This document shows positions 19,471 to 49,268 of a DNA stretch of 64,000 nucleotides, in pieces. Under the pieces are notes generated by a model. It searched no databases and was not told the origin of the DNA. It saw nothing but the letters and a program-made list of their open reading frames with translations. This stretch comes from Ophelia neglecta (lineage: Eukaryota), in assembly GCA_965285935.1 (NCBI GenBank), contig OZ260662.1, positions 67,952,001 to 68,016,000 of the forward strand, written 5' to 3'. Position numbers and translations under genes: made by a program. How positions within the stretch are numbered: position 1 is the first letter of the stretch; each line of letters opens with the position of its first letter.

Positions 19471-22400
19471 ATGAATTCATGCATTCTGATAACAGTAACT
19501 TGGCATATTTTATTCTACTTTGGAACTTTCACGTTATTTCTCTTCGATCCTTGTGGTGGGAGCAGACAAGAAAACAATGATTCAACGGTGGTCGACTTAC
19601 CAGTCATAAGAGTTGGCTCCAGGTAGGCAATAGAAATATAGTTACTAGTCTATAGTTGGCATCCTCATTCATTATTAAATTCTATTGGATTTTCTTTCTT
19701 GGACCCTTTAGTTTATTGTTTTCAAACACTGATTTATCTCTCATGGACTATCAATTACTGCTATAAACACGCTTTAAATTTTGATTAATTTTATATTGGA
19801 TTAGTGAACTAGCCACCAGGTTATCAAAATGCATGCATGTCTTTCCATTGACTGAATGAATTATTTACAGACTTAATGATATGTACTTTTTAAAAAAAAA
19901 ACGACACGCTCGATGCGGTGCTCATGTAAAAAAAAAGAAATAATTTATAGCAAGAGCAGTTTTTTACGCAGCAGACGACTTTTCTTATTCGAGAAAGTCA
20001 TAAGAGCTTTAAAATAAGCAGGGCATGACTTACATCCGGTTATGTCTGTTGACTGACACACTCAACATAAATAAACTCAGGAGTCATATTTCTGTTGATA
20101 AGAAGAAATTCAATGCGCTTATCCTTGTTAAGTGGCAGTGATACCACCAACTCATACATTTGGCAAATCAGTATCTAGAATGCGTCTTTTCTAAATACAA
20201 TGTCGAATTGATCGATAAAATCACTATATATATCACGATGGTTCAAATAAGCTGAGGATTTCAAAATTTACAACATACAACTAGAACAAAGACTTTTCAA
20301 TATATGGCTTCCACCGCTCAATCTTTATAAAATAGTTACTTTATACAGTAGAAACAAGAACAAATTCTATGAAAAACCTAGGTACTCTCCCTCGTAAAAA
20401 AAAAATCGGCAATACTTTGGCTGTGGGTATTATCAATGGCTAAGATCTATGATATATACGAGTCTAGACAGCTGTTAAATTCCGTTCGTTCATAAACTCC
20501 TCATCACTTCATATCGCCAAGGCAAAAAACCTGAGCTATATGTTTCAGATGTGGGCAAATGGGGGCCGGAGGTAGTCTATGCAAATCAAAAGCCAATCAG
20601 ATTGAACAGGATAAAGTTAGATTTATAAATATAATGACGTGTTTTCTTTATTTTCTATGGCGTGTTATAAGGTGGTAAGACTTACGTGTAAATAAACTCG
20701 ACCGTAAACTTACAGTTTACCTATCATACCTCTGACTCGACAAAGGCATTATGATTGAAGTTTTAATGCAATTTGAAATTATGTGACTTAAATTTGAAGT
20801 ACCTGGATTAATGCCCTTCATCGATCACGTTTGTTATCATGTTATTGATGATCAATGCTCATTTTACAGCCATTACACACGTGGGCATGGCAATGTGTGC
20901 TACAAAGAAACAAGCCTCGGTTTTAGTCGAAGGAATTAAACAAATGTCATAATAACACCTATATCAATTGATAAACATACAATGCGATTATCATGCAATT
21001 ATACTTTTTACTAAGACCAACTTGTCGTTTTTACTGTAATACTGGCCGTAATTTATGTAACAGGTGTTTGTTTTAACAAGCCATAATTATGCGATAATTC
21101 ATATTCCATATTGATTGAAGTCATTAAGATATTGGTTGACGAATTAACTAGGTATGCAAGGGTAATTTGGTATTAATTGTTTTAAAATAACATAACAGGC
21201 AACAGATAAAACATCCGCGCCCATAAATTACAGTCTGCCTTCGGAATAACCGATAAAGCTTGAACCGGTGAATACTGGGCTCAATTACACTAATTCCTGG
21301 ATCAGGTCTTGGAGGGAGCTATTCCATGTATAGACGAATTGTGAATTTAAAACAGTTTCGACTGGTGGCAAGTCCCTACAAAACTCGTCTGGCACCGTTG
21401 GTTTTGCCAGGGATTCAAGAAAGTTTCTTTTATCCCAGGTTTTGCTGAGGTGTCCGGTGATTATCTGTGCATTAGTCTATCAGGAAGGCCACTGATCAAA
21501 GCTTAAAGAGGGCCGAATCTTGATATCACCTGTTTCTGACAGACAGAGCTCGTGGGATAAAGTATGGTCTGAGATTTTCTCCAGAGAAAAATATTGCAGG
21601 TCCATTTGAGATACTTTGGTGATGTGTAAGTTCACTTATAGGAATATGCCCATGGAGTTGCAGGCGGGCCTTGACAATAGAATAAAACCAATTGATAAAC
21701 CAAATGAGACCAACATTTAAGGCACCCACACACAAAATAAAATTCCTCTTAGTGGTATTTAACCTCCTTGATATGCATGACCATATGCAATAGAAACAAA
21801 TGTACAAACCATAGAATGTAACCACAAAGCATAATGTAACACAGAGAATAACATAATATTAGATAATACTAAACAAAACACCGGGCACACACCGAATTCC
21901 CTGCAGGCTAGCAAGCCCCCATCGGGACCCCACCCAAAAATTATTTTCCTGAAATACGCCTCGACCGATATGATATGGCCGTTTAAACTCAATATGCAGT
22001 ATTTTGCATTTTAAGCTTTTTTCTAAGTAAATGCCCCATTTATTAATGTGTTTTATAGTGTGACGGGTGTATCGGAGGAGAAACGATTAGTGAAGCACCT
22101 GTTGCGCGACTACCGGAAAGTAGGAAGGATGGGTCGTCCGGTGAGGAACTCCTCGTCAAGCCTCGTTGTCGAGTTCGGTCTCGGTCTGATCAAGATGGAC
22201 GTAATGGAGAAAGACAATAAACTCACAATGAGTGCTTGGTCCAGATATGTAAGTGATGTTGTTTTTTTCTTGATCTCCTTGTATAATGGCTCGACAGTCT
22301 GAAGAATAAGCAAATACTCTCTATAATTTGGTCCTGGATGGTCATAGATGTGCACCGAATGAAGTTATAGTTATCTCAGCACGGGGTAGTTCCACCAACA

Positions 22401-25400
22401 TTTAGAGGAAAACTGCAGAGAGGGTGTTAAAGGGGTCTGTAACTGACAGTGTTAATATACTTTATGGGTGGAGTTTGACATGCCTTAATTGGATTGCTAA
22501 TAGGGTCTCAACCTTACTCGAGGCATTGATAGCACAATCATCTCTAGGCCATATCTCGCCAAGGTCCTCTGTCAGAATAGACAGGGCTGGTCCGGCGATA
22601 TTATGTCAGGGAGTTGTTTCGACACGAACAATGGTAAAAAGTACAGTTTTACTCTGTGTCTCAGGTAAGAAAACCCAGCTTGTTTGAAAAGACAGTCTTG
22701 CCATTGACTAGCTAAGCTTACGTTATTACCTTTTGGACTATACCATATGCTGAAAACGAGCTGGTGTAAACAAACTTACCTTAAACTTTCATTCTAAATT
22801 AAAAATGAATCGATGAATTGTGCAATGAATGTCTTCATGTGACACTTCTAGTCACTAAGTGTACAGTCTTCTCTCTTACTCGCTTCATGAGGGCGCGACT
22901 GAGCGGTTATTTAACAAGCCTACCTGTTAGTTATTTTAATCAGGTACACACAAAAAAAACTATTCTTGAGATTAAATGAACACTGCCATGTTAGCCTAGA
23001 CATGACGGATGAAGCGTACACTACTGTCTGTCTTACTAAATAGAAAAACCGACCATTCCTTGATATGTATACATATATACAAATCTCTCTTTTGTAAAAG
23101 GACATTATCTAGTGAATATAGTTTGAGGTTGAATTTTCATCTGCGCTGGAAAATGGTGGAAACACCATAAAGGCCACTTTAGCCGTGTTGGATCGAGAAT
23201 CTCATATTTGTGACAATGGCATGAATATCAAAGACTCGAAGAAATGAAAACTTGTTTTTAAAAAATGTTAACTTTAAAACTATTGGAGAAAAGAAGCAAA
23301 TAAATAGCCAGACACATTCCCGGGCTAACACGTCATGTTTCAATAGAAAATAGTTTGATATCTCAAAATACAGAAGGGTTTTCCTTTATAAAATCGGAAA
23401 ATCGGCATAGCACCAAAGCCTCAGGTTTAGATGGATTACCGCCACGCCTGTTCAAGGATACCCTGCTCACATTGCCCTTGGTCGTGTATTCCTCCGCCGC
23501 TTATCAGGTAGTGGATAAGGGTCTATGAGCAGGGTAGGTCAAGGCTCGTGCGTATTCCAAAGCAGCACAATTTAAACGCATCTGCAGTACATCGATCAAT
23601 GATTGAGAAATTCTTAACAGACTGGAAACTTGCAAAGGTGAAAGCAATTTTCCAATCTGGTGACTTTACTCTGGTAAATAACTACAGGCCCGTCTCTGTG
23701 CTTCCATCCTATCTGTGATAGTTAAAGTTGTGGAATGGCATTTCTTCGATTTAATACCCAACTATCTTCAACTATATTCTAAATAGTGAAAAAAGTCAGG
23801 TTTTCGACCATAACACTTATCACTGGTAGCACACCAACTGCGTAGAATTTGGTTATTTAATTAAAAGAATTGTTTGACGCGAAATCCATTCCTGTTGGTA
23901 AGTAGACGTGTATCATTTTTTATGCCGCTGGTATGAGGGCAGTTATTTGCTTGTAGTTGGAGAATGCTGCATATAGACCTAAAGTAGTGACACTTGTACA
24001 CAATTTGGCAGGATTTATTCAAGGAGTTTTCTGCACATGGAGGTCTGTAAGGATATCTGAGTACAAAAAGGACAGTATCTGAGTAAACTTTGTTCAAATG
24101 CCAGTCTTCAAATGTCAGACTGTAATATTAGAGAACTGTGTTGTACTTTCATTTTGTCTTGTCATATGTTAGCAGGAATTAAACTATAGTACAGCGTGCT
24201 TTTCGTCAAAAAAGCTTCCTTCTTTATACAAGTCGTTACACAATAGCTACTTTTCGTAATAACTGCATTTTATCTTCGTAATATATCATGTTATAATATG
24301 CAGTCGGATTTGCAGTAAGGATATGTAAATCATTGTGTATCAAACAATTGGCTGAATAAAGATATATAAATTCGATTTTATTTAAAAATGATTTGATTCC
24401 AAGGAAATAAGTATAAAGAAAAATGGTCGAGTACGAGCAAGCATACACTTGTCTTTGACTATGCCGTAGCTGATAATGACACAATGAAACAGCTTACATC
24501 AAATAATGTCTTCTTTTATGAAGGCGGACTTTTCCACTTCATCTAAACAAAACTTAGGTAGTTGTTCATATTGAAAGACAAACCCAAGCAATATATGTTT
24601 CCTTCTAGGTAACCATAATTTGCGCGTACTTATTATATACTATTCAGTTGCGCTAATAAAAATTTCCAGTATGGGCAATATTTTCTCCTTTCTATTTGCA
24701 TTGTCTTTTGGTTGACATAACTTGATGAATTATTAGGACCGCGTTTTATTTAATGGATGTATTCTAGATGGCTGATTTGGCCTTGTCTTCCTGCCGAACA
24801 TCCACTCGTGTATTGATCAGATATTCTATAGTATAAACTGCTGTATTGCAAACCAAACGTCGGGGGTCCAATATACTTTATAATCTGGCCCCAAATAAAA
24901 AAAAATTGAAATCAAAATCTCGAATGAACTTTTTTGTGCCATCATTTATATAAGTTCACTGTTATATCTTAATTGAGTTTTTGTCACTTATATTAATTTT
25001 AGTTTAATTTACCATAACGTCTATAATCTATATTTTTACCTTTGAAGAGGGGTACAGTGGCCCCCAATACTGAAAATGGGGCAACCTTTACGTCCAATTG
25101 GAGGACGAAATTCCGAAGTATGGTTCAATACTGAATTGTTACGGTTATTTTCTCAATCATATTGGCAGATACGCCGGAGGGTCTGCAAGCAGGACTGAAT
25201 ACACTAGAAACATATTGTGAAACATGGAAATTGAAGTTAAGCACAGAAAAAAACTAAAGTGGTAGTTTTTAGAAAAGTGGGTAGGTTACCGGGGAATCTG
25301 GGGTTCAAGTATAAAAAAGCAAAAAGAAGTCTCGAACTTTTCTTATTTGGGTTTAGTCTTATCAGCGGGCGGCTCTTGGACGGCAGCCCAGAAGACCCTG

Positions 25401-28400
25401 GCGAAGCAGGCCACGAAAGCAGTTTTTTGTTTGAAAAAATATACATGAGATGAGAATATATATAGATATAACATGAGCCCCACAGACATGTGCTCTCTAT
25501 TGATAAATTAGTTATTCCTGTTTTAAACTATTCCTCTGAACTATGGGGCTTTCATCGGGGGGGGGGGGGTGAATGTAGAGAGGGTTCATCTCAAATTTTG
25601 TAAAAGTATTTTAAACTTAAAAGACAGTACAAAGAATGAAATGGTTTATGGGGAGCTTAATCGGTTTCCTTTACAAATTAATAGGTACCTAAATATAATT
25701 AAATTGTGGCTTAAACTGATTCAAGTAGGTGGTAATAAGCCAATGCATAAAGTCTATTTAATATTATACAGCAGACTACAGCAGGATAATTGGGCCAGTA
25801 AAGTAAAATCTCTTCTGTTCAAATACGGTTTCGGAGAAGCTTGGCTGAATCAAGGTGTTGCCGATGTAAAACAATTTATAGTAATATCTAAACAGAGACT
25901 CTTTGATTGCTTTAAGCAAGATTGGCATGGGAATATAAACGATTCCTCAAAGTGTATATTTTATCGGTTTGTTCATCCAGACTTTGGCGTTCTGCCTTCT
26001 GATATGGACTGTGATGTGAGCATAAAGAATAAAAAAAACCCTGTGCAGATTTAGGTGTCGCAATCATTATTTGTATGTGGAGAGGGGCAGCTGGCAAAGG
26101 CCACCTGTAGAGTTTTCAGAGCGCAAATGTAGTGTATGGGATAAGTTGGACGATGAATACCATTTTGTACTGGAATGTTGTTTATTTTTCGAACTACGTG
26201 CCAGATATATTCCAAGATACTATGTAGTAAGGCCTAATGTATACAAACTTTTGGAACTGCTTAGATCTACCAATAGTAAAACTCTAAATAACTTAGCAAT
26301 TTACATCGGAAAAGCATCTGATATACATAAATTTTTTCTGATTCCATATTATTCATTGAATTTGTAAGCATTTAATGGTCTCTCTGACGCCATGTATGTT
26401 CATTTATATGTTTTGACTATACAACACGTAGGGTGTATTCCCTTTTTTTGTTGAATAAAACACTCAATTATAAGTTACCCCTGCCTACAATTTTAGAAGT
26501 GGTCAGAGGGAGGGGTAGTTGAAACAATGATTAATTTTAAGAAAACGATTCTCTTTGTATTGATTTCGAATACATCAAGCTTTAAAAATAAACAAATGTT
26601 TCATGCCGGCAAATGTTTCACAAACCAGGAGCACAAGTTCTCGTTAAAACTCCGAGACTATTAAAATGAGTTCAAGAACCATCTTTGTCAAGCGACAAAA
26701 TATCTTTTCTTTGGTAGATATACCTCGAATATGTCATTTAAATTAACTCATTCTGGGTGGAAATTTGACCAGGCCTCAATGGCCATAGCTCACGTATTCG
26801 TTTCGTGGCCACGAATTTTAAATTAAACAGACATTTAAGTGCACCCAGCGTGACCCGCCCTCTGGCGACTGGTACCCTGACTTCCTGTCACGCGTTTCTT
26901 TACGTCCCATCATTCATAGCGACCGCATCTAATGTGATATCCAAGGCTCGCCGGGACTGACACATCCAGTTAGGTTACTAAGAGGGCAAGGCAGATGCAT
27001 CGATCTTGATTGACACACATCCAAGGAAGGCGAGATCGGGTGCATTCAATTAGGCTCCTCTGTCAGGTTCGACTCAGCAGTCGTGTGATAGAGGCCACAC
27101 CAGGCTACCCTTAATCAAATGCGAGTTGTTTTCAATCCCAGTTAGAAAATACATACCAGCGCAATTCAATGTAAAAAGGCCAAAAATGGGGAAAAAAGCA
27201 ATCTCCTAAAACATCTTAATTGCTTTACTCTGCAAGACGTCCGATTCATTTTCTACACAACGTTTTAGACTGTGAGCGAAGAGAGATTTGAGAGATTCCC
27301 TGTTCAAATGAACGTGTATAGAGGATGTATGAGACGGATCTATTTGCACGTTTTGCATGGTTACATGCAGGTATTGGGGACTAAAGCTGTCTAACCATAA
27401 AATAAAATGCTCATAATTTATAATAAGATAAAGCATCAATATTTGATCAATATCATGGCCTGGTTAATTTGCCTCATTTTACAATTTTTCGGAGATTAGT
27501 TATTTATGTAACCCAAAATATCAGACGTTAATGGTACAAGAAAGTTCATTTTTGTTTCTTTTTGTTACGAAACTAATTACGCAATTTTAAAATTTGATTC
27601 CAAAACTTATCAAATTTATTATTGTAACTAATTCAACGTAAATGTTATCTTGATTAGTCTTTTAGCGGATGCACAGTTCTGATGTAAGGAATTAAATTGG
27701 TAGACATTTAGGCATTTTCAGGTTCTCAAATTGATGTTACTAACTAAATAATTGAGTTAAGGCTATAATTTTTAAAATGTTATATTTTTCTTCTATTAAT
27801 CGGTGCAACTTCATAATCAATCGTCGTTATACATACCCGCTTGATCAACTCATATATTCGGTGACCGTAACTATATAGTAAAAGGCAAGATTTATACTGG
27901 GAAATTATTTCACTAAATTTCTCATCTTGGTAAACTTGTACATGTACGTAATATTTAACTTAACGTTAAATACCAATAATTAGGATTGATTAATGATTTC
28001 ATTTTGTTAAGTATGAAAATAGTTAAGAATCAATAAAGTGTATTTTCGTACAGATTATCATTTATAAGTTATGAAGTTAGAAAGTTTTAGAAGTCAATAA
28101 TAATCTAATATAGATTTGGAAGAAATTATGAGGCGTTTTGATTTTTGATAAGTAGAGTCAGAAGAGGTTAGAAGGAAAGCTCATCATTGAATAGTTTGGA
28201 AATTAAACAACCCCAAGTAATGGGTGTGTCGGATAAAATCTGACATTATATACAATCGGTCATCACTAACAATAAAAACTAGGAGTGGATACCCGGCAGA
28301 CAATGCAAAGCCAAATAATTTTTCAAGAAAAGTACAATATAACGGCATCATAAACCGTCTGCTGCAGGCCCACAAACACCAATCCTAGTCGACAAACTGC

Positions 28401-31400
28401 TGTACACCCAATATGTTGTAACCGCGACATTCCTTTAGTGGAAAGAATTGGTTTTTGCTGACGCTTATCAAACGATAACCAGTTTTATGAAATGATTATT
28501 TATGGAGTTTTGTTCTTTAACTTAAAATCAGCAGACCGAAGTGCACATATATAGATAGTAGGTCCCAGGCCGAACAGACCGATATTCGGTTGGACCGAAA
28601 TCTTCAGATTTGTAACAAGTGTTTGCTGATTTTTAGAATCCACATAGGTTTGCTATCTGTAGTACGAATAACAACAGCACAATAACTTTCTCAATCTGCT
28701 TTTACGGCCTAAAGAGCTCTAAGTCGAAGGGCTGAATGAAATAGTCTGTTGATTAGGCCCTTAAAACTTCAAACTGATTGAACAAAAGTCGAAAGATTAA
28801 TTTTACTGAGTTCCCACGTTGGTGAAAGTATATATACAAAAGGTGTGCTTTAAAACAAGAACCGCAGCATAGAATATGTGTGCATAGGTTGAGTTGGCAC
28901 TTTTGATTAGATTGACTCTAAAATTTACAGCTGCTATGGCTGTCATAGAAAAAGTCTCACCTTTATACCTGAAGTAAAAGGGGAGGAAACACTACACACA
29001 GGATCAGTGTAAGTTAAAGAAATAAAAAAAGTGAAATAAAGAATAACAAGTGGTGATTATTTTCGTTCTTCGGCCCTATTCTGAAACAAGGGAACCAACT
29101 TGACAAAAATGAAACGGCTTATTTACAAATGCTACTTCACAGATTGCGGAAAATAAGAACGTTGTTGCACCAGATGCACCGGCCTTTTCTTATCCTGCGA
29201 AAAAAGTATTGTTTTATTTTCTAAATGTAGAAAGGGTGACAAGGAACGTTGTTAGTCATCCCAGTTATTATCATAGTTGAGTGTTAATGTTTGCAAATGA
29301 TTTATCTTAAGTGGGTGGCTGGGTTGACCGAGTGCACACACGTACGTCTGTGCTATACAGTCGATGATTGATTGTTGTGGTGACGACCAACAAACTCTTG
29401 GCTAACTACATGGCAGCATTTTCAGTCATTATATTTATTACGAAAATAAACATTGCAGTACTCAGCCCGCGGGTTTTTGTGTCTAACTGGATGAGAGGGT
29501 ACGGTCAAATTCCGCCTTACACAGGTCGTACCATCCCTAAATCATTAAGAAGTTTTTGGTTACGCATCGACGCAAGAGACGAAACGGTAGAATGACCATG
29601 ACATTTCAACTTAGCAACTCATTACAGATACTGCAATTCCGCACTCCGGGGGAGGGGGGGGGGGGGTTCCTACGGTGAATGTAGACCTCAGATGTCCCTT
29701 ATGAATAAAGAGGCTGGTTTGTTGGCATAAGCTGCAACCCCTAAGGCCATATACCACATATTCTGATTTGGTCCATAAAACTGAGCCATATCGAACCATG
29801 TAGGATGATATTTTTCTTCTTTTATTAACAAGTTAATTCCTATTCCCTTTCTATTCTAGATTCAGTGATGCCTAGAGCATCATTGACTTCTAGTTACAAC
29901 TCTCATTTCAGTTTGCATGACCGATTCCGTATTTTGAGGGATCTTGTAAGTCCATGTAACAGCATCCGCAGAACAATGTAATAGCGGTAGTGCCCGTCGA
30001 TAAGGCATCTGCATCCACTTCCTGCGCCGATTGGGAAAAGCCTTTCATTTTGCCCAGAGCATGTGTGTTTATTCAAGAAGTTCAGTTGTTGGCAGTTGAC
30101 AATCAAAATTTGGCCCATTACTTAGGCCCAGTATGTGAGGCATGTTATTCTTCTTAGATAGCTCTACACAAAATGTGGCACTGACAGTTGTAAAAACAAA
30201 TGTATTTTTGCCTACAAAAACAGGAAACTTCCTTACGTTGGTTCGCCAATGATTGATCACGCCAGCTATATGGATAACGGGGGGTACGGGTACGCTAGGA
30301 ATATGCCATTGCATCTACTGGCTGCTCAACACGTAGTTGGTTTCATCAACTGGTAGCAGGTATAGCGAGGTATTGGGAGTAAACACTAACTGATAAAAGA
30401 AAATCTGATAATTTCTTTACCCCAGCAATCAAATTATGCTATCTACTTGGCACCACTTCTGCTGCCGGCGCACCCGGTATCATCGTGGGGGAGACAAATT
30501 GGTTGGACCACATAGCGACTCGATTATGGTCAACAGCAGTGGCTACAAGAAAAATCTTGACATACAGATTGATTACGATTGGCTTAACATGTGATTAAAA
30601 TTTTGATAAAAGTCAATGATTGAACACTACCGGTGATAATATACATGGTAAGGAGGTCTATAATTGTAGTAGGCTACTTATCCCCAGATGCACGCGGTCA
30701 GTCGAAGTTTGGCAAAGGTAGCTTCGATGATGAACGGTAAATCAATGGTGCCTCCTACATTCCTTGAAACTAACATTGTGACCTGTAACACATTAGTAAC
30801 GGTAGTAAGTACATGTAATAGAAGCAGACGTCTTACTTCGGTCAACAAGTGATAACAAGATGTCGAGTATGTGTATTCTATGTCCACGGATGAGAAGAAA
30901 ACCAAATTTTTGAGCATAAATCAGTCAGCACTTCATTTACAACTGTGAAGAGAGGGCAATATTCATATTGTGAAACTGTTGCAACCATACCATGCTTGAA
31001 AAGCGTGGCGAAGACCATTTTATCGTTTTTCAGAAATGGCTACCTCAAACATACCCTGCTCATACTGCCTGGTGTTTTTTTCCATTGCTGTATTAGCCAG
31101 AAATGAGGATTATGAAACAGACCATTGTTTATTGTTTAATGTATTCATTATCATATCATACGACATTATATAATACAGTTACTTCTCGTCACGCTGAAAT
31201 CATTCTCAGAATTTCTTTTTATCATAAGTATAAAGGCCTTAGATAGCACATCTGCCCCGTACCCGTTATTCTTTCTGTGACCTACTGTTATTATGAAAGG
31301 CAAGTCTCCACATTCGTCTCATTATAGTAAGGGGTTGAGTTTGAATCTGTCAAAGAGAATTGAGAATTCTTATGTATTTCTAATATAATTGTATTACACG

Positions 31401-34258
31401 TAAACATTATATTTTATTCTCAGAAATGGACGGACGAGTACATGAGGTGGGACCCGGAGCAGTATGGAGGGGTGAAATCTGTAAAACTACCAACACGCGA
31501 GATTTGGATGCCGGACATTATGCTGTATAACACGTGAGTTATTTTAATTCATAATTATGTCGATTTCAGAACCTTTCCGTGCTTTTTTAAACCATAGTTT
31601 GGAACCTATCATATGAAAGTATGCATATATATAAGTGTATAAATATATAGTGATTTTTTTACTCGACAGTGCAAGTACAGAGAAATTCGAGAGAGAGGTT
31701 CTAGCAGTGGTCCAATCAGACGGCGTAGTCTCGTGGTATCCTCATCGGATATTTCACAGTGCTTGCTCCATTGACGTTAAAAAGTTCCCATTTGACAACC
31801 AGACATGCCATATTTGGTTTGGTTCATGGACCCATCCCATTGAGGAGGTGACTTGTACTTTGCGAATATATAATATAAAAGTTTTTTAAGTGTCGGCCAT
31901 TTGTTAATCGCTTCATTATGAAACATTACATTCTAGTTACACTCAGATTGAACCATATCATGCTCGTGTACACTTTCTATTTGGGAGCCCCACCCCCAAC
32001 CCTGCTTTTTTGATAATATTATAATGTTAATTATATCATTGCCAATAATCGAATATTGACGAGCTGAACTTCTCGCAGGTGGACTTAGAGTTGGCGTTTC
32101 CCCAGGGTATTGACCTGAGTACTTTCCAGGCTGATTTCAAAGAGACCAGCAAATGGGACATCCTTAGATGTGACGCTATAAAGATAGGGGACGAACAGCC
32201 AGGCGGGTTCGCAGTGCTCGCATTCACGCTCCACCTTAAAAGACGGATGATATTTTCAGGCTATATATTGACATTCCCCGTGGTCTTCCTCAGCTTTCTG
32301 ACGTTACTCGTATTCTGGCTACCGGCGGAAAGCGCAGACAAAAGTAGTTTGGGTAAGTTGGGATTCCCTTGATAGACATTTCAATATTAAGATTAAGACA
32401 CAAATTATTATTACACCAAAATACCAACTGACTAGTCAGAACAGTTCCCATTAATTCTAATACTAGTATCTAGGTCATCACACAATACTACTGTGGTGGG
32501 GTGATGCCCTAACTGGCCATGATGTCCAAATTAAGCTTAGAGGAGATTACTTTGCACTAAGCTATTGCAGATCACTGACTCCTGGATCCTTTTGTGTCCT
32601 TATTCGATCGTTATTCTTTGTCCTTGTGACAGGCATGACAATATTTGGGAGCCTGCTATTATTGCTGTTGATTCTCGTGGAGGCGGCTCCCCCCACGGCT
32701 GCTGCAGTCCCTCTCCTCGGTAAGTGTTGTCACGACTTAGGTGCAAAAACACCAGAATCCCATTAAAGTAAAGCAGTGGTGGTAAAAAAAATAATTGACA
32801 CTTTGAAAGATTGCCGAAAACTTACAAAGTATCTCTAAGTTTGAAAGTAGACCTAAAAAGAGCACAATGAACCAAAGAACAGATGGATGTACTTGAGAAT
32901 ATCTTTCATAGTGTTTATTTCATATCTGTGAACCTTAATTCCCGCAAACTATAAGCTGAAAACTATTTTTCGTAACACACATAATCATATTGTCAACAAT
33001 TGATTTTAACATATTTATTTTCAATATTTTGGATTTTACAGAAGCTTAGCTTAAAAAATTGTAATCTCCAAAAGGTCATAATATACAAAAATATACACAG
33101 AGCGCATGTTGTGAAGGTAAATGGGTGAGATGGTAGTGAGACGATTGGTTTAAACATATTGTGAACAATTAAGTTAAGATCAAATGGTATGCTCATTATA
33201 GAAGATAGAAAAGATTTAATAGTTAATAGATAAAAAAGAACGGACACTCTAAATAAATAAATTGCTTGAAAGATAAATAACTGAAGCAAATTTACATTGT
33301 GTCAAATTACTGTAGTTTTTAATTGAGTGAAATTTCTGGTAGAATGGTAAAAAATGTAAGGAGTAGGAGAGGTGGACAATATACTTAACTTTTTATGACA
33401 TATCCAGACTATCAAACCTATTGGACCTTTTCAATGAGTTATGCCAGTCAGCCGCATGTCTTTTGAAAAAAAAAAAAGACATCTGCTGCTGATATTGAAA
33501 GGACACTGCCACATACGACTTTAAGGGATGTGTGCTTTCCATTCTACTAAACGGAGGTTACAGTTATTTAATTTACCTCATTGTTCGATTTACAGGCCTG
33601 TATTATTGCTTCAATATTGTCATCGTGATGTTATCTATATTCCTGTCAACAATCGTGGCTAAGCTCGGTGATCAGAAGGGAAGTCGGAAACCAGCACCGA
33701 AGTGGCTGAAAGTGGTATGAAATCATTTGCACTAAACTCGTTCTGTTCTATGTTTCACTGTTACATTATCGGGACCTACAGGCCACTTCTATAATGATCT
33801 TATTCCCTCGTTTCCTGTTTCAGGTTATCATAGACGGTATCGCTACCCTCATGTGTTTAAAAAAGCCGACACATATGCGGAAAAAGAAATCCGAAGAAAG
33901 AGGCGAAGGGGATGAATCTGTCTCCCTGGAGGACACCAAAGACACGCAAAGCAACAATGGCCTTGCTCCCGATGTGAATACGACGTTCCGAGACGAGATG
34001 TGCCAGGCCATTTACACACTACAGGCCATTTGCGATCATAAGGGATCAAGTTTTCAACATAGCAACCAACAGATGCGACGAGTGGTTAAATCCATGCAGG
34101 CTTATCTGATCGATAAATGCGATGATGAGATGAAGGCAGCGCATACCAAGGTCACTAACGAAGAATGGAAATTCATTGCACTTGTACTGGACAAAATATT
34201 TCTTATTCTGTATATTATTATCATAATTGTGTCAATAGTGTTTCTGTTTCCGAGATAA
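19471..34258 (+). CDS. Gene A: Cys-loop ligand-gated ion channel subunit, nicotinic acetylcholine receptor-like, non-alpha type, 8 coding exons, 514 aa
   Basis: Exons join(19471..19622,22059..22248,31424..31533,31670..31847,32079..32352,32633..32719,33596..33714,33824..34258) = 1545 nt. All introns are GT-AG with phases 2,0,2,0,1,1,0 and there is no internal stop. Motifs: signal-peptide-like start MNSCILITVTWHILFYFGTFTLFLF; EEKRLVKHLL..GRPVRN; WTDEYMRWDPEQYGG..IWMPDIMLYN; Cys-loop CSIDVKKFPFDNQTC; FGSWTH; M1 YILTFPVVFLSFLTLLVFWLP; M2 DKSSLGMTIFGSLLLLLLILVE; M3 LYYCFNIVIVMLSIFLSTIV; MA/M4 EEWKFIALVLDKIFLILYIIIIIVSIVFLFPR. Exon 1 is the least certain (supported by phase match and hydrophobic start). 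Confidence 0.93.
23410..23830 (+). mobile_element. Decayed LINE fragment (N-terminal part of the RT domain) in intron 2 of gene A
   Basis: KASGLDGLPPRLFK at ~23417 and DWKLAKVKAIFQSGDFTLVNNYRPVSVLP at 23620-23706, followed by a degenerate SGFRP. These are typical LINE ORF2 motifs, here interrupted. Confidence 0.82.
25080..26465 (+). mobile_element. 5'-truncated decayed LINE (RT C-terminus plus Cys/His-rich tail) in intron 2 of gene A
   Basis: ILADTPEGLQAGLNTLETYCETWKLKLSTEKTKVVVFRK; FDKLVIPVLNYSSELWG; VERVHLKFCKSILNLKDSTKNEMVYGELNRFPL; ERKCSVWDKLDDEYHFVLEC. It has several frameshifts and AATAAA at ~26454. Clade not assigned. Confidence 0.9.
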
Positions 34259-37200
34259 AGACAAGTGAAGGTTTGTTTTCAATTAATACCCTCTTTACAA
34301 GTGGAAAGTTGGTAATAGTAGTTGAATGATGTATACATCCTAGCCATTTTTAGGGGTAGCTAACCTATTAAGAGCTTGATGATCATGCAAAACATTCAAG
34401 CGTTTAAGCCAATATTAACCATAAGAATGATACATTGTGGTTCTAAGCCATACACCATAAGAAGGATACTTTGTGGTTCGAAACTCAACAATATCACTAG
34501 TTTCAAGAAGATGTGCAGCTTAACGAGAGGTTTTTTTAACTTTAAGTTGTCAATCACATTGTTGGACGCGTCACACTGGTCCCAGGAGTTACTGTACGTC
34601 TAATTCTACGTGTATTATTTTATCACTTGCATTTAGTAATTAACAATAGACGATCGTGAACAAATGTGTTTACTTGGTTCTTAGCCGTAAAATGTGCATA
34701 ATATTACAATTCCGTGCATAAATACTTACAAAGGAACGAAGTTCGTGTGACCCATTTCGTATGTCTGGGTGTCTGCCTGTTGGTATTCTGATTGGCTGTC
34801 AAATTCGTCGACCGATTTCGTTAAAACTTGGCAGAACAATCTATAGATCTCTATACAGACAACGTTCGCTTCGATTTTAGATGACGTAATTGGATCAAAC
34901 GAGATTAAGAGCGTAATGACCGTGGCACTTATTCACCGATCTACAAAATGGACGCCTGTGTGCATTGTGATTATTATGTACTAGTGATATTGATTTGGCT
35001 GACCGAGAGCCAATTTCAATGTTACAGCGTTCTTGTGAAAAGTTCTGCCAATTCAAAGCCATGGGTCGGAGTTTCATGTGTTCACTTACATGTGACTACT
35101 TCCTGTTATATTTTGTTTGGACATACAAGCAAACAAATATGATGCTTGTTATTACAAATGTGATTTAATGGGTTATTTTCTTATGGGGGGCATTCTTTGT
35201 TGATGGGTGAAGATGCTGGGATGCGGTAGCAAGTACTGTCATTTTTGACAAGTTTTTGACATGCCATACAGATTAGTAACTAATGGAAAGTCTAGACCTC
35301 GCTGAAGTCCAGTACCGCGATTATAACACCTCACGTGGGATCGTAAGGCAGTTTGACAGGTTTCTAAGAACACCATCGACTTGGGAATTTCAAGTTAATT
35401 AGCGAGGGCTCGAAATGGCCAGATAAAGGTGTGTTTAATATGTATTCCTTCCGACGCGTCCAGGCAACCTCCAGGGATAACATAGTGGATGGATTCTTTA
35501 TAAATTGTGTATAATCCCAGTTAAATGCTTGGTGATGGAAAATCCCTAAAAAATACATATTATGATGCGGAGGTAATTGAAAATTCTTCTAGTTAATTCC
35601 CAAATCTTTATTTACACTGTGTTTCTTCCATAAATATAAAATATTGAAAAAGATCTAAGGGGAAATGTTAGGATTCAGCTAAAGACTGCCGTCTGCTTTG
35701 CTCATTATTGTTCTGGCTACTAGCGTTAGCTTCTACATGCTTGCACTTCCGGTTTTTAACTAACTGTTAATTCGAGGAATGATCGTGCTCTTGACTCCCA
35801 ACAATATTTACCTCTATTTACCTCTATTAACAGGTCTAGAGATGTGTCTGTATTGTGTAAACAAGGCCTATGTTTGTATCTGTAATTACGGTGTCAGAAT
35901 CAGGCCGCAACTGAGTTCCGCAGACGGACACCTCTCAATCTCGATATAACCGAAGAGGACACCTGAAGCATTCCTTGGAGGTCATTTCCAAAGTATGAAG
36001 TATAGGTTTATTAGAGTTGTCATACGTACAACACAACGGTATGTTAATTAAACCTAAATCTCTCCAGATTCCCTGTTCCGCTGCAGGAGGGCAGGTTAAA
36101 GCCTAAGGTGGTCGTCTGGCAGACGGAGATATGAGGTTTACCACCTGGGACATTAAGCGATAATTATCGTCTGCGGACTGCATATCAAATGGCGTCAGCC
36201 CACTTGTCAAAAATCGCACTCCCCTTTCGGTGGCTTTATCTATGACGCACTACCGGAAACGGAACAACAAACACTGTCAGCAGCACTAGATAACTGGCGG
36301 GGGGGGGGGGTTCATTTAATAAATTATGTATTAAATTAAATTGATTTTAAACATTCAAAACAAGCAAACACAATTTGACGTTTTAAGACGAATCTAGGTG
36401 GTGCTTGTCCCGTGTTGATTCGTATGAGTCCACTCCAAGATAAATCATACGACCTTGTTAAATGTAGACTCCTGTGTTCTGATGTTGTTAACATGTGCCT
36501 AATGAACATAAAGTCATTCGGCATTAATCAAAATCTACGATAGTTTACGAGATGACGCTCCAACATTATGAAAATGAATGCAAAGAACAACATACTGCCA
36601 ATGTTTTTTTTCGACAATTTGATTAACGTTACTTCATTGAAGTAATTTAATGAAGGTTATTTTACATACGGACCTTTATGACTAGTACATACAGTGGAGC
36701 TCCAGTGGCACGGCTTTATGCCTAAAGCGCCCGGTTCATTAATTACTCCAAAGTCCTTTGGTACTGTGACAGGTGTGTAATAGTGCGTTGATATTAGGGT
36801 TTGCCGTGGCACAATCATAGCACATGTTGCCAGGATCTTCTTCGTATTATAAACTTAAAAAAAGGATCAATCATTAATGCATCCCTTCAATAGTTAATGC
36901 ATTACGAATTACCGACAATTTTTACTTCTTAAATATATACCTTAGCCTTACAGTTAATGCATCATTATGAGTTGTTCTTGTTAGTTTGTCGACAAAATCC
37001 GGAGGCTGTATTAATTGTAAACTTTATAAATGTCAAATCCGGCTATCAAAATCAGTCTTTATATAATAATATGGAGTGAAAAGCCTTGCCCGTTACCGTT
37101 TTCAAGAGCACCGATCAAAAACAACTCTATATAGCATGCGCCATCCTCTAATGGATGCATGAACCACAGTTAATGCACAGTCACCGGCCTAAATTCTAAT

Positions 37201-38496: not shown

Positions 38497-38585
38497 CATT
38501 GTGAATCATTAAAACAGTTAAGCATAGTTACTAATACATCCATTGTGAATCATTAAAACAGTTAGGTATAGTTACTAATACAGCC
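38497..38585. repeat. 44-bp tandem duplication
   Basis: CATTGTGAATCATTAAAACAGTTA.G.ATAGTTACTAATACA at 38497 and 38541. Confidence 0.9.
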
Positions 38586-39970: not shown

Positions 39971-40090
39971 CATATAGGCCTATATATAGGTCTATATATA
40001 GGCCTTCATATAGGCCTATATATAGGCCTATATATAGGTCTATATATAGGCCTTCTTATAGCCCTATATATAGGCCTATATATAGGCCTT
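39971..40090. repeat. Palindromic 12-bp minisatellite (TATAGGCCTATA)n, ~10 units
   Basis: Directly visible tandem array with a few variant units. It produces the spurious IGLY repeat in ORF 39896..40120. Confidence 0.95.
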
Positions 40091-43800: not shown

Positions 43801-44339
43801 GTTTAATTTTCATCACATTTGGTGAAAATGTATCCGGTCCAACATCCCCATATGATAAATAAATAAGGTTGACCCACTTTTCTTATCGTTTTACAGATGC
43901 AAAAATGGCCTAAGTGTCATATTCATAGTTTTGAGGTAATCAAGGAAATGGTTATAAGATTGGTCAATTTACTAATAAGCAACCTATAGTTAAGTTTTCT
44001 ACGCGCTTTTTCATAAGGACATTCCTGTTAAAATCAAAATCTAATAAGCGAAGATATATCTGCGGTTTTGTTAATTAGGCCATAATTGATAAGAAAATAT
44101 GGCCCAAGTAAAAACAATCTTTAAACAAATAGACCTAATTGCCAACATCCGAATGGCCTTAGTGACAATGATGTGTGGTATGAAAATGGCCTGAGTTACA
44201 TCAAGTAGTGTAATAAATAGCCTAAGATACACACAAAAATGGCCTAACTAACAAAACTAAATAGACCCTACTACCTGGTCAGTTAGACCATTTATATATT
44301 GACCAATACTTGCGTTCACACTTCATGTGCACGTACCTA

Positions 44340-44398
44340 CGGTCTGTATCAAGGTCTGTATCTAGGTCTGTATCCAAGTTTGTATCTAGGTCTGGATC
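44340..44398. repeat. 12-bp tandem repeat (GGTCTGTATCWA), ~5 units
   Basis: ggtctgtatcaa ggtctgtatcta ggtctgtatcca agtttgtatcta ggtctggatc. Confidence 0.85.
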
Positions 44399-45401
44399 AC
44401 GTGGTTATTTTGGTCTGCATAACTCATAAGGCATAATTTTGATCAGAATGTCATGTAGGCTATTTTTAATAAGTGGGACGATATCCAAGTCACGACTCCA
44501 TTTACTAAAAGCTGATGTACGTTAACGAGTATAATACATAGCTTAAGTAGCCAAGTGGAAATTACCGTTATGCTTAGTTCCCAACCGAATGGGAATCGAT
44601 TTTATAAAAAAAAAAGATGATCACAACAATGTCGTATTCATGTCTTTAGCTGGGCAAAGATCCAAACCTATTGAGAAAACTTACCATGAGCCAAATGATT
44701 AGAACTTTAATTTGGGTGCGAGGCTTTGCTTTGGTAACCGATATGACATTTAGAAAAGTTACTATTTAATGATGATTTTTTTGTGAGGTTAAGTGATACA
44801 ATTGCCAAAATGAAGTTGTAAATTTGTGTTGGATACAGATCAGTAACATGACAGCCGAGAAAAGCTCAGCTCATCTGAAGGCCATCCAATTACATTCTTT
44901 ACATATCAAGATAAAAAGGCGCATCCTGGCTGTGTGGAAATTCACATAACCTGGCCCTTCTTCAAACTATACAGTTTTCTGGATATGTCATGTCTAACAT
45001 ACAGTTGAAATATGATTATATCGGCCGAAAGGGTTCATAGACCTGGCGGCAGTTTGATGGCATTTTTTAATCACTTGGTGTGGATGATTTTCCAAAGATG
45101 TTTTCCAAATGATATTTCGCCGTCGACAGAACGAAATGCCAAAAGAAATCAAGATGGAGGGTCGGCTAATTTGAGAATCAGGGACGATGAGATTTTTGTC
45201 CTGTTATTATTCAGTGGCTGTGAAACGACTTCGTAGTCCGGCAGTAGGCTGTTGCAATGCTAAATCCTACTTCCGTGGATGATACCATAGCTTAATGGAT
45301 ATAAACAACTGCACAGGATCCGACAGAAGTTTTATTCAGATACAATATTTTAGCTGAAGGGTGTATGGTAATGTAGTGCCCATTCCATAGTTTCTTTCAG
45401 G

Positions 45402-48400
45402 ATGTGGAAGGTCACTCGCTCGATGACCAGGGTTACCCTCATGATACTAACGTCACACTACTTCACACAAACTGTTGCAGGAACAGGAAATAGAAACAGT
45501 TCAGCTAACCAAAGGTATAGTTAAAGATTAAATTTCAATTCGCTGATTTGAATAGATTTACTTGATCTATTTACGGAGCGAAAAATATAATTAAGTTTCT
45601 TTCTGATCTACAAATGTTAATCTTTTTGTAGGGCTCATAACCATCAAAATCTGGGATATAAAATATCGGACGAAAAGAGATTGGTGAAGGTCTTACTCAG
45701 GAGTTACCGTCGTATTGGGAAAGTAGGGCGTCCTGTGGTGAATGTAAGTGACCCGGTCACTGTGTTATTTGGCCTCGGTTTGATACAACTGGACGTAGAC
45801 GAGAAGAATAATATGTTGGCTCTCAGCACCTGGGTCAGATATGTGAGTAAACACCGTCTGCTTCCGATAGATCCTAATCGTCTGGTATAATACTGGCCTC
45901 TTTCCTCCTCCTCCTAGCTAAACATTTACACTCCAGCCATTATTTGTAGTAAATAACCAAGAGGACCAACTCACAAGTTTTCGTTGTGTATTTTAATGAG
46001 AAAAGTCTCTAATGTATGCCTGATATGGCTAAAAAAATTATGCGCAGTATGGCTTTAATATGCTCAGTGGTTGTTCATTTAATCTAGTAATGCTGCGGCC
46101 TTAAAACATGTCCTTGCTAAATTTCGATCACTTCACAGAATTAAAAAATGATTTTGGGTATGTTCTTTTTAATATACTTTACTTGGGAAATGAAGTAGGC
46201 TTGAAATGAAGTAAAACGATGGACGACAGTTCGTGTTTTCCTTAATATAAATCGTTTATATCAAATCACTTAATTGCATGCATTAAAGCATTGGAAAGAT
46301 GAATATCTGCAATGGAATCCGGGTCAATTTGGAGGAGTTGACAGACTAAAACTACCACACAACAAGATATGGACGCCTGATATCATGCTGTATAATACGT
46401 AAATACACTTTTAGACAAATGGGACTTGTGTGATAAATGTTCCGAGTGAATGAACGACTTAAGTTTAAACACTGGCCGTATAAGATCGATGAGGAATAAA
46501 CGTTATCTTCTTCGCTATTTGTATTTTCAAATTAAACAAAGTTAACAACAGTAATTAGTATAAAAAATATTAAGAACGTTTTCAATATTAAAATCTCTTC
46601 TTTGAAATACGTGATTATGCATTGAGTTTAATCGGAAAGGGCCAACACAGAGGAGTACATTCGGTCAGCGCTGCTCATTGTCAGTCATACTGGCATGGTA
46701 CAGTGGTATCCGCATCGACTCTATCAGAGCGCATGCGCATTCGACGTCCGGAACTACCCGTTTGACAATCAAACATGCCATCTGGCCTTCGGCTCCTGGA
46801 CACACACACTCCAGGTGAGTAAATCCAAGGCAGAGCACCGACGAAGTCAAACTCTTAAACACTGATCTGACTTACCTGATGGCTATTGATCAGAAAGAAG
46901 AATGAAGACTACAGGATTTTATTCAAGGCACAAATTTGAAAATACGTTGATTTCTTGCGAAAGGATTCCTAGCCATTCTGTCAAAAACCAATATTACATA
47001 TAATGTAATCACTGTGCTTTGATAAACTAAGCAAGGTTGTCTTTGGTGATTCAGTTTGTAGACTAACCTTACTAAGTAGACACATATATATGTGTGCAGA
47101 AATATTATGTTTTATTTGTCGATGAAAAAATTGTTTTTATTCTAGGTGGGTTTCCTTTTTGCTTTTCGCGAGCTTTTCTTTAGGGTTTTGGTGTACTGAC
47201 AATTGGTTCCTTGATCAGGCCATGTTGGATCCTTTAAAAATGGTCTATTTTTCATGTATATGAACAACATAAAATAAATGGGAGGCAATTTGTTACTATC
47301 ATTACCCATGTAATACTTCAAGGGCGTCATGCGTCGTGTGTATTTTATAAAAATATTGTAATGGTAACCTGCCTGGCGGCTTTTTGTTTTGAGTGTCCTG
47401 TTGGTGGCAGATAAGGCGGGACACAGGACAAGTTTCCCATACCCGCCCACCTTAATTTTTGGTATGTTTTCAAATGCCATGTTATCATAATAGTGTTTTC
47501 ATTTAGTAAATGTAAGTCTAAGTAATTTCTTTAAGCAATCAATGAAACTAATATAAATATTAGTGGCTGTTATAGCATGAATTGCTTGCAATACTTTCTT
47601 TTCGTTGCCCCATTCTGATTTCCTTCTTGTCTTTTCCGAGGAATTGGACCTTCGATTGGCCTTTGAGAATGGTTTGGACTTAAGCACATTTCAGGCAGAC
47701 TACAAGGATTCCAGCAAATGGGAGATTACTGGGATTGAAGGTCGTAAACAGATGGTGGACGAGACATACGGCGTTCTCAGCTTCAGAATCGAGCTCCGTC
47801 GTAAGCTCATGTTTTCCAGTTACATTCTGACTATTCCAGCTGTCTTTTTAGCCTTCCTCACCCTTATCGTATTTGTCCTTCCGGCCGATGACGTCGAGAA
47901 GTCCATATTAGGTGAGTAGACAAAAGAAGCACTTCTACCATTTAAGAATATTTGAAAGGATGCATATATGTTATGGCAGAAATATAAAGGGTTTGCTTAC
48001 TCGCAAAGCTTCTTAAGTTTAAGAAAAAGGGTTTCAAAAGTAACTAACCAAATCTCTCATAACGACCTAATTTAGTCCAGACAGTTAAAGTCCAATATTC
48101 GATAATTTTGCAATGCGTTTAAACGAATATATAGATTTCTAAGTCTAATTTCGGAAACGGTTTTTTTTCAGGATTGACTATTTTCGGTAGTCTATTAATC
48201 CTTCTGCTTATCCTGGTGGAGGCTGCCCCTTCCACTGCCTCGGCAGTCCCTCTACTGGGTACGTGAGTTCCGCTTGTTATTTGCATATTTAGACTCAAGA
48301 CAAAGCAAAAATTGTCGTGTACCTTTATATAGATCACCGATTGTTCAAACTAGAAAAACATTGTTATATCCTATTTAACTGTGTTTTTTATCATTTTCAC

Positions 48401-49268
48401 TTTACTGTCTTTTTTCCAGTTTTCTTTTTTACGAAGGTTTGTTCTACCGTTCCTTTGTACGAATACACGTTATATTGTTTCTTTTTGACGAAGGTCTGTT
48501 CTACTGCTTTACTACCGTAATTGTGATACTGTCTGTGTTTCTGGCGTCCTTGGTTGTGAAACTCGGTAATGCAGACAACCAAGGAAAACGCCGAAGAGTC
48601 CCCGGTGCTGTTAAAAAGGTTAATTTTTCTCTAGAAATATTATTTAACATAATTATAGTGACAGTAATATCAAAAATAATAGCGACAACCAACAATTGGT
48701 TGTAGTTTATAGTTCGTGGTCTTATTTTACATAACTTTAATTAGTTTTAAAGCTGTTGTTTTATATACATCAGGTGATGTTTAGAGGGATAGCAAGGTGT
48801 TTGTTTATAGATCCTTTATACATAGAAACAAACAGTGATGGTGAAGCGAGTAATAAGTCGAAGAGACAAAGTAGAAAGTGTGAATCCGTATTCCTAGCGG
48901 ACCGAATGTCAGCACTACCAAACGCGGAAGGATATTTGACACGTGATTCTGACCCAGATCTCCATAGACTATTTACGTGCCAGGACTACAAAGTCACATA
49001 TAATGATGGGGTATCAAATGATTCCACCTTAACTGTCTCGCAATACACTCTTATTCAGACTCTTCAGACACAACTGAAAAGCATAAACTTTATTCTGGAA
49101 GAAATTGCGAAAAGGCAACAGGCGACAGAGGACCGAAATATTTGGGAAAAAGAAGTACACTCCGAGTGGAAATACTTAGCTTCAGTCTTGGACAGGCTCT
49201 TCTTCATCATTTACTTTGTCGCCATCATATTGTCGATATTATTGTTATTTCCATGGCGTGCAGATTGA
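45402..49268 (+). CDS. Gene B: tandem paralogue, Cys-loop nicotinic acetylcholine receptor-like subunit, non-alpha type, 8 coding exons, 528 aa
   Basis: Exons join(45402..45514,45632..45842,46289..46398,46640..46814,47641..47911,48172..48258,48494..48618,48774..49268) = 1587 nt, with the same intron phases as gene A and the same 110-nt and 87-nt exons. Motifs: DEKRLVKVLL..GRPVVN; WKDEYLQWNPGQFGG..IWTPDIMLYN; Cys-loop CAFDVRNYPFDNQTC; FGSWTH; M1 YILTIPAVFLAFLTLIVFVLP; M2 EKSILGLTIFGSLLILLLILVE; M3 LFYCFTTVIVILSVFLASLVV; EWKYLASVLDRLFFIIYFVAIILSILLLFPWRAD. The ATG lies 1 nt after an acceptor (tttctttcag, ends 45400), implying an upstream non-coding exon. Confidence 0.92.

What the first reader, a model, noticed from the sequence alone, without database searches (positions are those of the whole stretch)
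19471..49268. Tandem pair of intact but highly atypical nAChR-like subunits: candidate novel (non-cholinergic?) heteromeric Cys-loop channel
Seen: two co-oriented genes ~11 kb apart with matching 8-exon structure and open frames. They are well diverged in sequence yet share the same odd features (short loop C without CC, extended loop F, WYPHR in the loop E region, M2 TIFGSLL). Established: ACh-binding alpha subunits carry loop C YxCC, lophotrochozoans have expanded divergent nAChR families, and cephalopod chemotactile receptors arose from nAChRs that lost the ACh site and are found in tandem clusters. Inference: this is an old duplicated pair under purifying selection that may co-assemble and respond to a ligand other than ACh, or act as unusual accessory subunits.
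Basis: partly seen in the sequence, partly recalled or inferred. Interest (0 to 1): 0.85.

Follow-up and report, generated by a model that had tools for sequence, protein, structure and literature searches.

The report
Conserved annelid non-alpha nicotinic-type subunit genes
Two intact neighbouring genes encode nicotinic-receptor-like channel subunits from an old, conserved worm (annelid) subfamily that lacks the acetylcholine-binding cysteine pair and the usual pore-gate leucine; this is an interesting variation on a known theme, not a new kind of receptor.

Summary
There are two co-oriented 8-exon Cys-loop receptor genes, g1 (about 19471-34258, 483 aa) and g2 (45402-49268, 528 aa). They are 11.1 kb apart, have identical intron phases, and are 48% identical. 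All the odd features are real:
- no loop C Cys-Cys, and a loop C 3-5 residues short;
- a 4-residue loop F insert;
- a WYPH(R) loop E;
- M2 with Gly at 9', aligned to Torpedo alpha Leu251.

They are not a self-contained pair. A third member lies about 44 kb upstream on the opposite strand. The genome holds about 12 genes of this no-CC/WxPH clade. g2's nearest paralogue is that upstream gene, and g1's is on another chromosome.

Each gene has its own orthologue in another assembly, and a sister lineage is 76% identical to a Capitella teleta protein, so the genome is probably an annelid. Synonymous sites are saturated, while pN is only 0.12 in the extracellular and membrane parts, which indicates strong purifying selection.

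Sister lineages in the same genome are true alpha types (YxCC) with the same odd M2.

Best reading: these are non-alpha subunits of cation-selective heteromeric nicotinic-type receptors. The octopus chemotactile-receptor analogy is not supported. Expression and ligand could not be tested.

The parts
Uncertain: the donor is the weak GTTATT, and an alternative first exon (ATG 20559 or 20634 to about 20673, donor GTAAGA) fits the same phase.
22059..22248 (+). g1 exon 2: N-terminal helix, beta1-beta2, and the loop D Trp (SAW)
31424..31533 (+). g1 exon 3: loop A (WMPDIMLYN). The Tyr aligns with Torpedo alpha Tyr93.
31670..31847 (+). g1 exon 4: loop E with WYPHR, the Cys-loop (C-x13-C), and the loop B GSWTH
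32079..32352 (+). g1 exon 5: extended and conserved loop F, short loop C without CC, M1, and the M1-M2 linker PAESADK
32633..32719 (+). g1 exon 6: M2 with 8' Phe, 9' Gly and 20' Glu
33596..33711 (+). g1 exon 7: M3
33824..34258 (+). g1 exon 8: intracellular loop, M4 and stop codon
45402..45514 (+). g2 exon 1: ATG and signal peptide; donor GTATAG, phase 2
45632..45842 (+). g2 exon 2: N-terminal helix and the loop D Trp
46289..46398 (+). g2 exon 3: loop A
46640..46814 (+). g2 exon 4: WYPHR, Cys-loop, loop B
47641..47911 (+). g2 exon 5: loop F, very short loop C, M1, and the linker PADDVEK
48172..48258 (+). g2 exon 6: M2 with 2' Ile, 8' Phe, 9' Gly and 20' Glu
48494..48618 (+). g2 exon 7: M3. A duplicated 27-nt acceptor copy lies 57 nt upstream (48421-48447).
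48774..49268 (+). g2 exon 8: intracellular loop, M4 and stop codon

Best explanation
g1 and g2 are functional non-alpha (complementary or structural) subunits of cation-selective, heteromeric nicotinic-type pentameric receptors in what is probably an annelid. They belong to an old subfamily of about 12 genes in this genome, conserved between annelid species. That subfamily arose from alpha-type ancestors by losing the loop C Cys-Cys and Tyr190, gaining a His in loop E (WxPH) and gaining a conserved 4-residue insert in loop F.

Without a principal (+) face they cannot bind agonist alone. They would contribute the (-) face (loop D Trp, loop E Tyr and His, loop F) to an alpha-type partner. Alpha-type sister genes with an intact YxCC loop C and the same unusual M2 exist in the genome (L017, L013) and are the likeliest partners.

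The pore keeps an acidic -1' (Asp or Glu) and a 20' Glu, which points to cation selectivity. It has Phe at 8' and Gly at 9' in place of the gate Leu. The hydrophobic gate must therefore sit higher (13' and 16' Leu), or gating is shifted towards easier opening.

Shown: gene integrity, family, motifs, orthology and purifying selection. Inferred: heteromeric assembly, the partner, ion selectivity, the agonist (acetylcholine or a close relative) and the gating consequence.
For: Family:
- Pfam PF02931 and PF02932 hit the exons.
- The best solved relatives are heteromeric-type nAChR subunits. Exon 5 matches Torpedo delta, alpha6 and beta4. The fused exon 4-5 of paralogue L002 matches alpha6 at 3e-27, then alpha3, beta2 and beta4. 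Exon 3 matches beta3 and alpha1.

Retained residues:
- Loop A Tyr (Torpedo Tyr93), loop B Trp and loop D Trp.
- An acidic -1' in a linker aligned to Torpedo delta PAESGEK.

Lost residues:
- YxCC.

Evolution:
- The subfamily has separate orthologues for g1, g2 and L006. A Capitella homologue carries the same TIFGSLL M2.
- The tree support is 100/99 for the clade that holds g1, g2 and L006.
- pN 0.12 against saturated pS. Polymorphism follows the same pattern.

Possible partners:
- Alpha-type sisters have YxCC and 9' Ser or Val with 8' Phe.
Against: - No expression data exist for this species: no RNA run holds the stretch.
- No functional data exist for any member.
- The loop E His is the residue that in the orphan Alpo4 (His131) caps the loop B Trp in a 'self-liganded' apo state. 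Alpo4 answers to neither ACh nor 5-HT (PMC10338036), so a non-cholinergic or otherwise unusual pharmacology is quite possible.
- A 9' Gly in several subunits of one pentamer would, going by L9' mutants of classical nAChRs (established knowledge), favour spontaneous opening. This fits poorly with a simple classical receptor.
- The joined full-length proteins could not be placed in a tree with named Lymnaea, Schistosoma or other reference subunits.
Confidence: 0.5

Rival explanations
1. Members of this clade, alone or with each other (for example g1 + g2 + L006), form a receptor for a ligand other than acetylcholine. This would be comparable to the orphan Alpo4 or, functionally, to the cephalopod chemotactile receptors. 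The conserved loop F and the loop E His and Tyr would build a new pocket.
For: - The loop C CC and Tyr190 are lost.
- The His sits at the Alpo4 His131 position (PMC10338036).
- Loop F is extended and almost invariant across orthologues, whereas it is usually variable.
- The whole clade has an atypical pore.
Against: - The extracellular domain is strongly conserved between species, unlike the fast-evolving pockets of the CRs (PMC11526382).
- The genes are intron-rich, not retrogenes.
- The closest solved relatives are ordinary heteromeric nAChR subunits, and CRT1 is weaker.
- True alpha-type sisters with an intact ACh (+) face share the odd M2, which fits alpha/non-alpha assembly.
Confidence: 0.27
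2. g1 and g2 are dedicated partners: a co-regulated tandem pair that assembles specifically as one heteromer.
For: They have the same orientation, lie 11 kb apart and share their odd features.
Against: - They are not sister genes. g2 groups with L006 and g1 with L010 on another chromosome.
- In the other assembly no g2 orthologue lies within 16.5 kb downstream of the g1 orthologue.
- More than half of the nAChR genes in oysters lie in tandem arrays, so adjacency alone carries little weight (PMC6896357).
Confidence: 0.12
3. One or both genes are silent or decaying copies from the lophotrochozoan nAChR expansion.
For: There is no RNA evidence. g1 exon 1 has a weak donor. g2 has a duplicated acceptor.
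Against: - The frames are complete and the splice sites canonical.
- Orthologues have the same structure, with pN far below pS.
- No exon indels appear in the sample's contigs.
Confidence: 0.04

Closest known systems
Non-alpha subunits of heteromeric nicotinic acetylcholine receptors (vertebrate beta2/beta4/beta3 and muscle delta; invertebrate non-alpha subunits)
   Same: - Cys-loop, four TM segments and an acidic -1' and 20'.
- No loop C Cys-Cys.
- Loop A Tyr, loop B Trp and loop D Trp are kept.
- These subunits give the best PDB scores.
   Different: - 9' Gly with 8' Phe instead of Leu-Leu.
- A loop E His at the position of the second Pro of the usual PP.
- A 4-residue conserved loop F insert.
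- A loop C shortened by 3-5 residues.
Alpo4, the orphan nAChR-like receptor of Alvinella pompejana (PDB 8bx5; PMC10338036)
   Same: - It is an annelid protein and lacks the CC tip.
- It has the WxPH motif. By my count along the alignment, chain His163 is the paper's His131, which stacks on the loop B Trp159.
- It has GSWTH in loop B.
- It is the best PDB match for exon 4 (8.6e-12).
   Different: - Alpo4 is a homopentamer with 9' Leu, 6' Gly, 16' Met and 20' Asp.
- It keeps both loop C tyrosines.
- It is only the 7th-best match over exons 4-5 and a weak match on exon 5.
- It is therefore not the same family in the narrow sense.
Cephalopod chemotactile receptors (CRT1, PDB 8eis and 9e6b)
   Different: - CRs are intronless, reported only from cephalopods, and have pockets under diversifying selection (PMC11526382).
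- These genes have 7 introns, are conserved across annelids, and match CRT1 less well than classical subunits.
Expanded lophotrochozoan nAChR gene families (Jiao et al. 2019, PMC6896357)
   Same: They are a lineage-expanded, sequence-diverse set of nAChR genes that often lie in tandem arrays.
   Different: The large molluscan expansions are mostly intronless retrogenes and species-specific. These genes are intron-rich and have one-to-one orthologues in other species.

Membership tests
Cys-loop (pentameric ligand-gated) receptor superfamily | Neur_chan_LBD followed by Neur_chan_memb, with four TM segments | tested here: met
   PF02931 hits exons 2-4 and PF02932 hits exons 5 and 8 in both genes. 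The PDB alignments cover M1 and M2.
Cys-loop (pentameric ligand-gated) receptor superfamily | 13-residue disulphide loop C-x13-C carrying the FPFD motif | tested here: met
   Both genes have C-x13-C with FPFDNQTC or YPFDNQTC.
Nicotinic acetylcholine receptor family (cationic branch) | Closest to nAChR subunits rather than to 5-HT3, GABA, Gly or GluCl receptors | tested here: met
   All the top PDB matches are nAChR subunits; 5-HT3A scores lower.
Nicotinic acetylcholine receptor family (cationic branch) | Acidic -1' ring, no Pro-Ala-Arg type anion motif, and an acidic 20' | tested here: met
   g1 has ...AESADK, g2 has ...ADDVEK, and both have 20' Glu. The g1 linker aligns with Torpedo delta PAESGEK. 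Selectivity itself was not measured.
Nicotinic acetylcholine receptor family (cationic branch) | Conserved 9' Leu hydrophobic gate in M2 | tested here: not met
   Gly aligns with Torpedo alpha Leu251. The same or another small residue is present throughout the clade, including the Capitella homologue.
Alpha-type nAChR subunit | Loop C Tyr-x-Cys-Cys | tested here: not met
   Neither gene has a vicinal Cys; g1 has one lone Cys. These are non-alpha subunits.
Cephalopod chemotactile receptors | Intronless, reported only from cephalopods, with a fast-evolving hydrophobic pocket | tested here: not met
   The genes have 7 introns and an annelid affinity, and the ECD is conserved with pN 0.12. The CR features are taken from PMC11526382.
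Alpo4-like family (family 43A of De Gieter et al. 2023) | Clusters with Alpo4 and the Capitella sequences in a full-length phylogeny | not testable with these tools
   Only the loop E His and the exon 4 similarity could be shown. The joined proteins could not be sent to a search, and no Alpo sequences were available as files.

The most novel reading that the evidence does not exclude
The 31-row clade in this genome comprises alpha-type members (L017, L012/L013/L015, L026) and the no-CC WxPH members, including g1 and g2. It could be a distinct, undescribed annelid (perhaps lophotrochozoan) class of nicotinic-type channels. In that class every subunit has 8' Phe, and most have lost the universal 9' Leu gate. 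The channel would then gate at another level of the pore. Its complementary face (loop E His and Tyr plus an invariant extended loop F) would recognise a ligand, or apply a regulatory mode such as protons or metals acting through the His, that differs from classical ACh gating.
Probability: 0.2. Interest if true: 0.7.

Novelty: new member of a known kind. Interest (0 to 1): 0.42.

Why it matters
Lophotrochozoan genomes hold many nicotinic-type genes of unknown function, and only one annelid orphan (Alpo4) has been studied structurally, without an agonist being found.

This locus defines a conserved, intron-rich annelid subfamily with clear one-to-one orthologues. It shares the Alpo4 loop E His and naturally lacks the 9' Leu, the best-known gating residue of the superfamily.

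It also points to specific alpha-type genes in the same genome as partners to try. This gives a concrete set of subunit combinations for deorphanising such receptors, and a natural experiment on where a pentameric channel gates when 9' is Gly.

It does not amount to a new kind of receptor on present evidence.

Tried and rejected
All searches were done exon by exon, by reference. The joined models were used only inside local scripts. Consequently there is no full-length phylogeny with Lymnaea LnAChR A-L, Schistosoma ACC or CR sequences, and no structure prediction.
- The look-up of sequencing runs found only three runs of unrecorded library type from one sample and no RNA run, so expression and co-expression could not be tested. 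Read laying on those runs gave contigs that run through introns, so they are genomic DNA; they could only confirm the assembly and show polymorphism.
As a result the 5' part of the upstream neighbour L006 and the region downstream of the window were not read.
- Synteny test: the contig with the g1 orthologue was read 16.5 kb past its stop without finding a g2 orthologue. This is inconclusive, because the g2 orthologue lies on a separate short contig.
- dN/dS proper could not be computed because synonymous sites are saturated. Only pN against pS is reported.
- The ESM Atlas search with the Capitella fragment returned only generic nAChR fragment clusters.
- Pfam found nothing on the long ORFs inside g1 intron 2 that look retroelement-like by eye.
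- The side idea of a charge-selectivity switch between the two M1-M2 linkers was rejected, because both keep an acidic -1' residue and 20' Glu.
Full report
**Gene models.** Reading the open segments on the + strand and fixing the splice sites by hand gives two complete genes.
- g1 exons: 19471-19532, 22059-22248, 31424-31533, 31670-31847, 32079-32352, 32633-32719, 33596-33711 and 33824-34258 (483 aa).
- g2 exons: 45402-45514, 45632-45842, 46289-46398, 46640-46814, 47641-47911, 48172-48258, 48494-48618 and 48774-49268 (528 aa).
- Every internal intron is GT-AG, and both genes share the phase series 2,0,2,0,1,1,0.
- Exons 3 (110 nt) and 6 (87 nt) have the same length in both genes.
- The two proteins are 48% identical (E 7e-148), and there are no further family members in the window.
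- Pfam places Neur_chan_LBD on exons 2-4 and Neur_chan_memb on exons 5 and 8.
- The one weak point is g1 exon 1. Its donor is GTTATT, and an alternative first exon ending near 20673 has a GTAAGA donor in the same phase.
All database searches were made exon by exon, by reference, and the joined step was left out.

All of them are present.
- Both genes have the C-x13-C Cys-loop.
- Loop C has no vicinal cysteines. Against human alpha6 it is 3 residues (g1) or 5 residues (g2) shorter.
- Loop F has a 4-residue insert relative to canonical nicotinic genes of the same genome.
- Loop E reads WYPHR in both genes.
- In M2 the Gly of TIFGSLL aligns without gaps to Leu251 of Torpedo alpha, the 9' gate residue.
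- Loop A Tyr (Torpedo Tyr93), loop B Trp and loop D Trp are kept.
- The -1' residue is Asp (g1) or Glu (g2), and 20' is Glu, in a linker that aligns with Torpedo delta PAESGEK. This is the cationic signature, so I see no charge-selectivity switch.
- g2 also has Ile at 2', as does its orthologue.

**Not a self-contained pair.** A search of the whole 762-Mb assembly with g1 exon 5 gave 37 matches.
- About a dozen genes share the no-CC loop C, WxPH (WFPQ in one gene, L008) and a small residue at 9'.
- One of them, L006, lies about 27 kb before the window on the minus strand. Its 5' end is some 44 kb from g1 and faces it head to head. The local cluster therefore has three genes.
- The tree used exons 4-5 (40 rows, 144 columns, LG+C20).
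- It gives a clade with 100/99 support made of three lineages: L002 with the Capitella protein; g2 with L006 (98/90); and g1 with L010 on another chromosome (100/96).
- g1 and g2 are therefore not each other's nearest relatives.

**Age and constraint.**
- Exon-level searches found separate orthologues: 67-77% for g1 exon 5, and 82% and 70% for g2 exon 5. These are higher than the 52% between g1 and g2 on that exon.
- One ENA assembly holds a g1 orthologue with the same exons 2-8, including the long intron 2 (L043, 71.5% aa). It also holds a g2 orthologue with exons 4-8 (L041, 68% aa).
- A Logan contig holds an L006 orthologue.
- The L002 lineage is 76% identical to Capitella teleta CAPTEDRAFT_93192, which carries the same TIFGSLL M2. 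The genome is thus most likely an annelid, and the odd pore is old.
- Synonymous sites are saturated (pS 0.84-0.87), while pN is 0.12-0.13 in the extracellular and membrane parts and 0.40-0.48 in the intracellular loop.
- In the DNA contigs of the sequenced sample, all six indels in 31300-34300 fall in introns. The two variants in ECD/TM exons are synonymous. The intracellular loop has three replacements and one silent change.
- Loop F is almost invariant across orthologues, while the tip of loop C varies.

**Relation to known proteins.**
- The best solved relatives are ordinary heteromeric-type nicotinic subunits: alpha6, alpha3, beta2, beta4, beta3 and delta.
- For exon 4 the best match is Alpo4 of Alvinella pompejana (8bx5, 8.6e-12).
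- Counting along that alignment, the His of WVPH is chain residue 163 and the loop B Trp is chain residue 191. These are His131 and Trp159 in the paper's numbering.
- In apo Alpo4, His131 forms a cation-pi contact with the flipped Trp159 ('self-liganded'). Alpo4 does not respond to ACh or 5-HT (PMC10338036). g1 and g2 share this His.
- Their pore differs, however. Alpo4 has 9' Leu, 6' Gly and 16' Met. Over exons 4-5 Alpo4 is only the seventh-best match.
- Octopus CRT1 is a weaker match still. CRs are intronless, reported only from cephalopods, and have pockets under diversifying selection (PMC11526382). This is the opposite of what is seen here.
- Tandem arrays are the rule for expanded nAChR genes in bivalves: 55-65% of the genes (PMC6896357).

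**Candidate partners.** The lineages that branch just outside the no-CC clade are alpha types.
- L017 has KFYPCC...YPD with 9' Ser. L013 has KYYPCC, and its neighbour L012 has 9' Val. L026 has CC with 8' Phe and 9' Leu.
- The unusual M2 is therefore shared by alpha-type and non-alpha members of one larger clade (95/88). This fits alpha/non-alpha heteromers better than it fits a receptor built only from g1 and g2.

**Verdict.**
The genes are real, intact, old and constrained.
- The most likely reading (about 0.5) is that they are non-alpha subunits of cation-selective heteromeric nicotinic-type receptors, in which the 9' Gly and the loop E His modify gating and the complementary face.
- A non-cholinergic receptor formed by clade members remains a serious rival (about 0.27).
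- Expression, assembly, ligand and selectivity could not be tested: no RNA run is on record.
- Another follow-up in this scan reported a different conserved annelid orphan nicotinic-type subunit elsewhere in this genome. That was used as a lead only.
- I file this as a new member of a known kind, with a natural loss of the 9' Leu gate across the clade as the point most worth following.

Noticed in passing
G000:C2:67917900-67927000 (loci L006 and L034), about 27-34 kb before the window start, minus strand: A third member of the same subfamily (short loop C, WYPHR, 9' Gly) lies head to head with g1, about 44 kb from it. It is g2's nearest paralogue and has an orthologue in a Logan contig (L044).
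   Followed up: partly
window 48421-48447 and 48478-48504: A 27-nt stretch containing the exon 7 acceptor of g2 is duplicated 57 nt upstream (93% identical). Using the upstream AG would add 19 in-frame residues between M2 and M3. g1 and the g2 orthologue support the downstream site.
   Followed up: partly
   Followed up: partly
window 32916-33218 (g1 intron 6): A high-copy repeat: summed contig depth rises from about 20 to as much as 17,000 in the DNA runs, with many loose ends. It is probably a short interspersed element.
   Followed up: no
window 23355-26367 (g1 intron 2): Several ORFs look retroelement-derived by eye, the longest being 161 aa at 25569-26054. Pfam gave no hit. The orthologous intron in the other assembly is also long (7.4 kb).
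   Followed up: partly
L017 (G000:C8:55.7 Mb), L012/L013 (C8:80.27-80.28 Mb), L015 (C8:81.03 Mb): Alpha-type nicotinic genes with an intact YxCC loop C but 8' Phe and 9' Ser or Val in M2. They are sister to the no-CC clade. L012 and L013 are themselves a tandem pair.
   Followed up: partly
L009 (G000:C2:65048634-65048879, minus strand): This subfamily member has an in-frame TAA inside the exon 5 match, so it may be a pseudogene.
   Followed up: no
window 39972-40089: A 12-nt tandem repeat (about 10 copies, unit ATATAGGCCTAT) lies in the g1-g2 intergenic region. It reads as a GLYI-repeat ORF.
   Followed up: no
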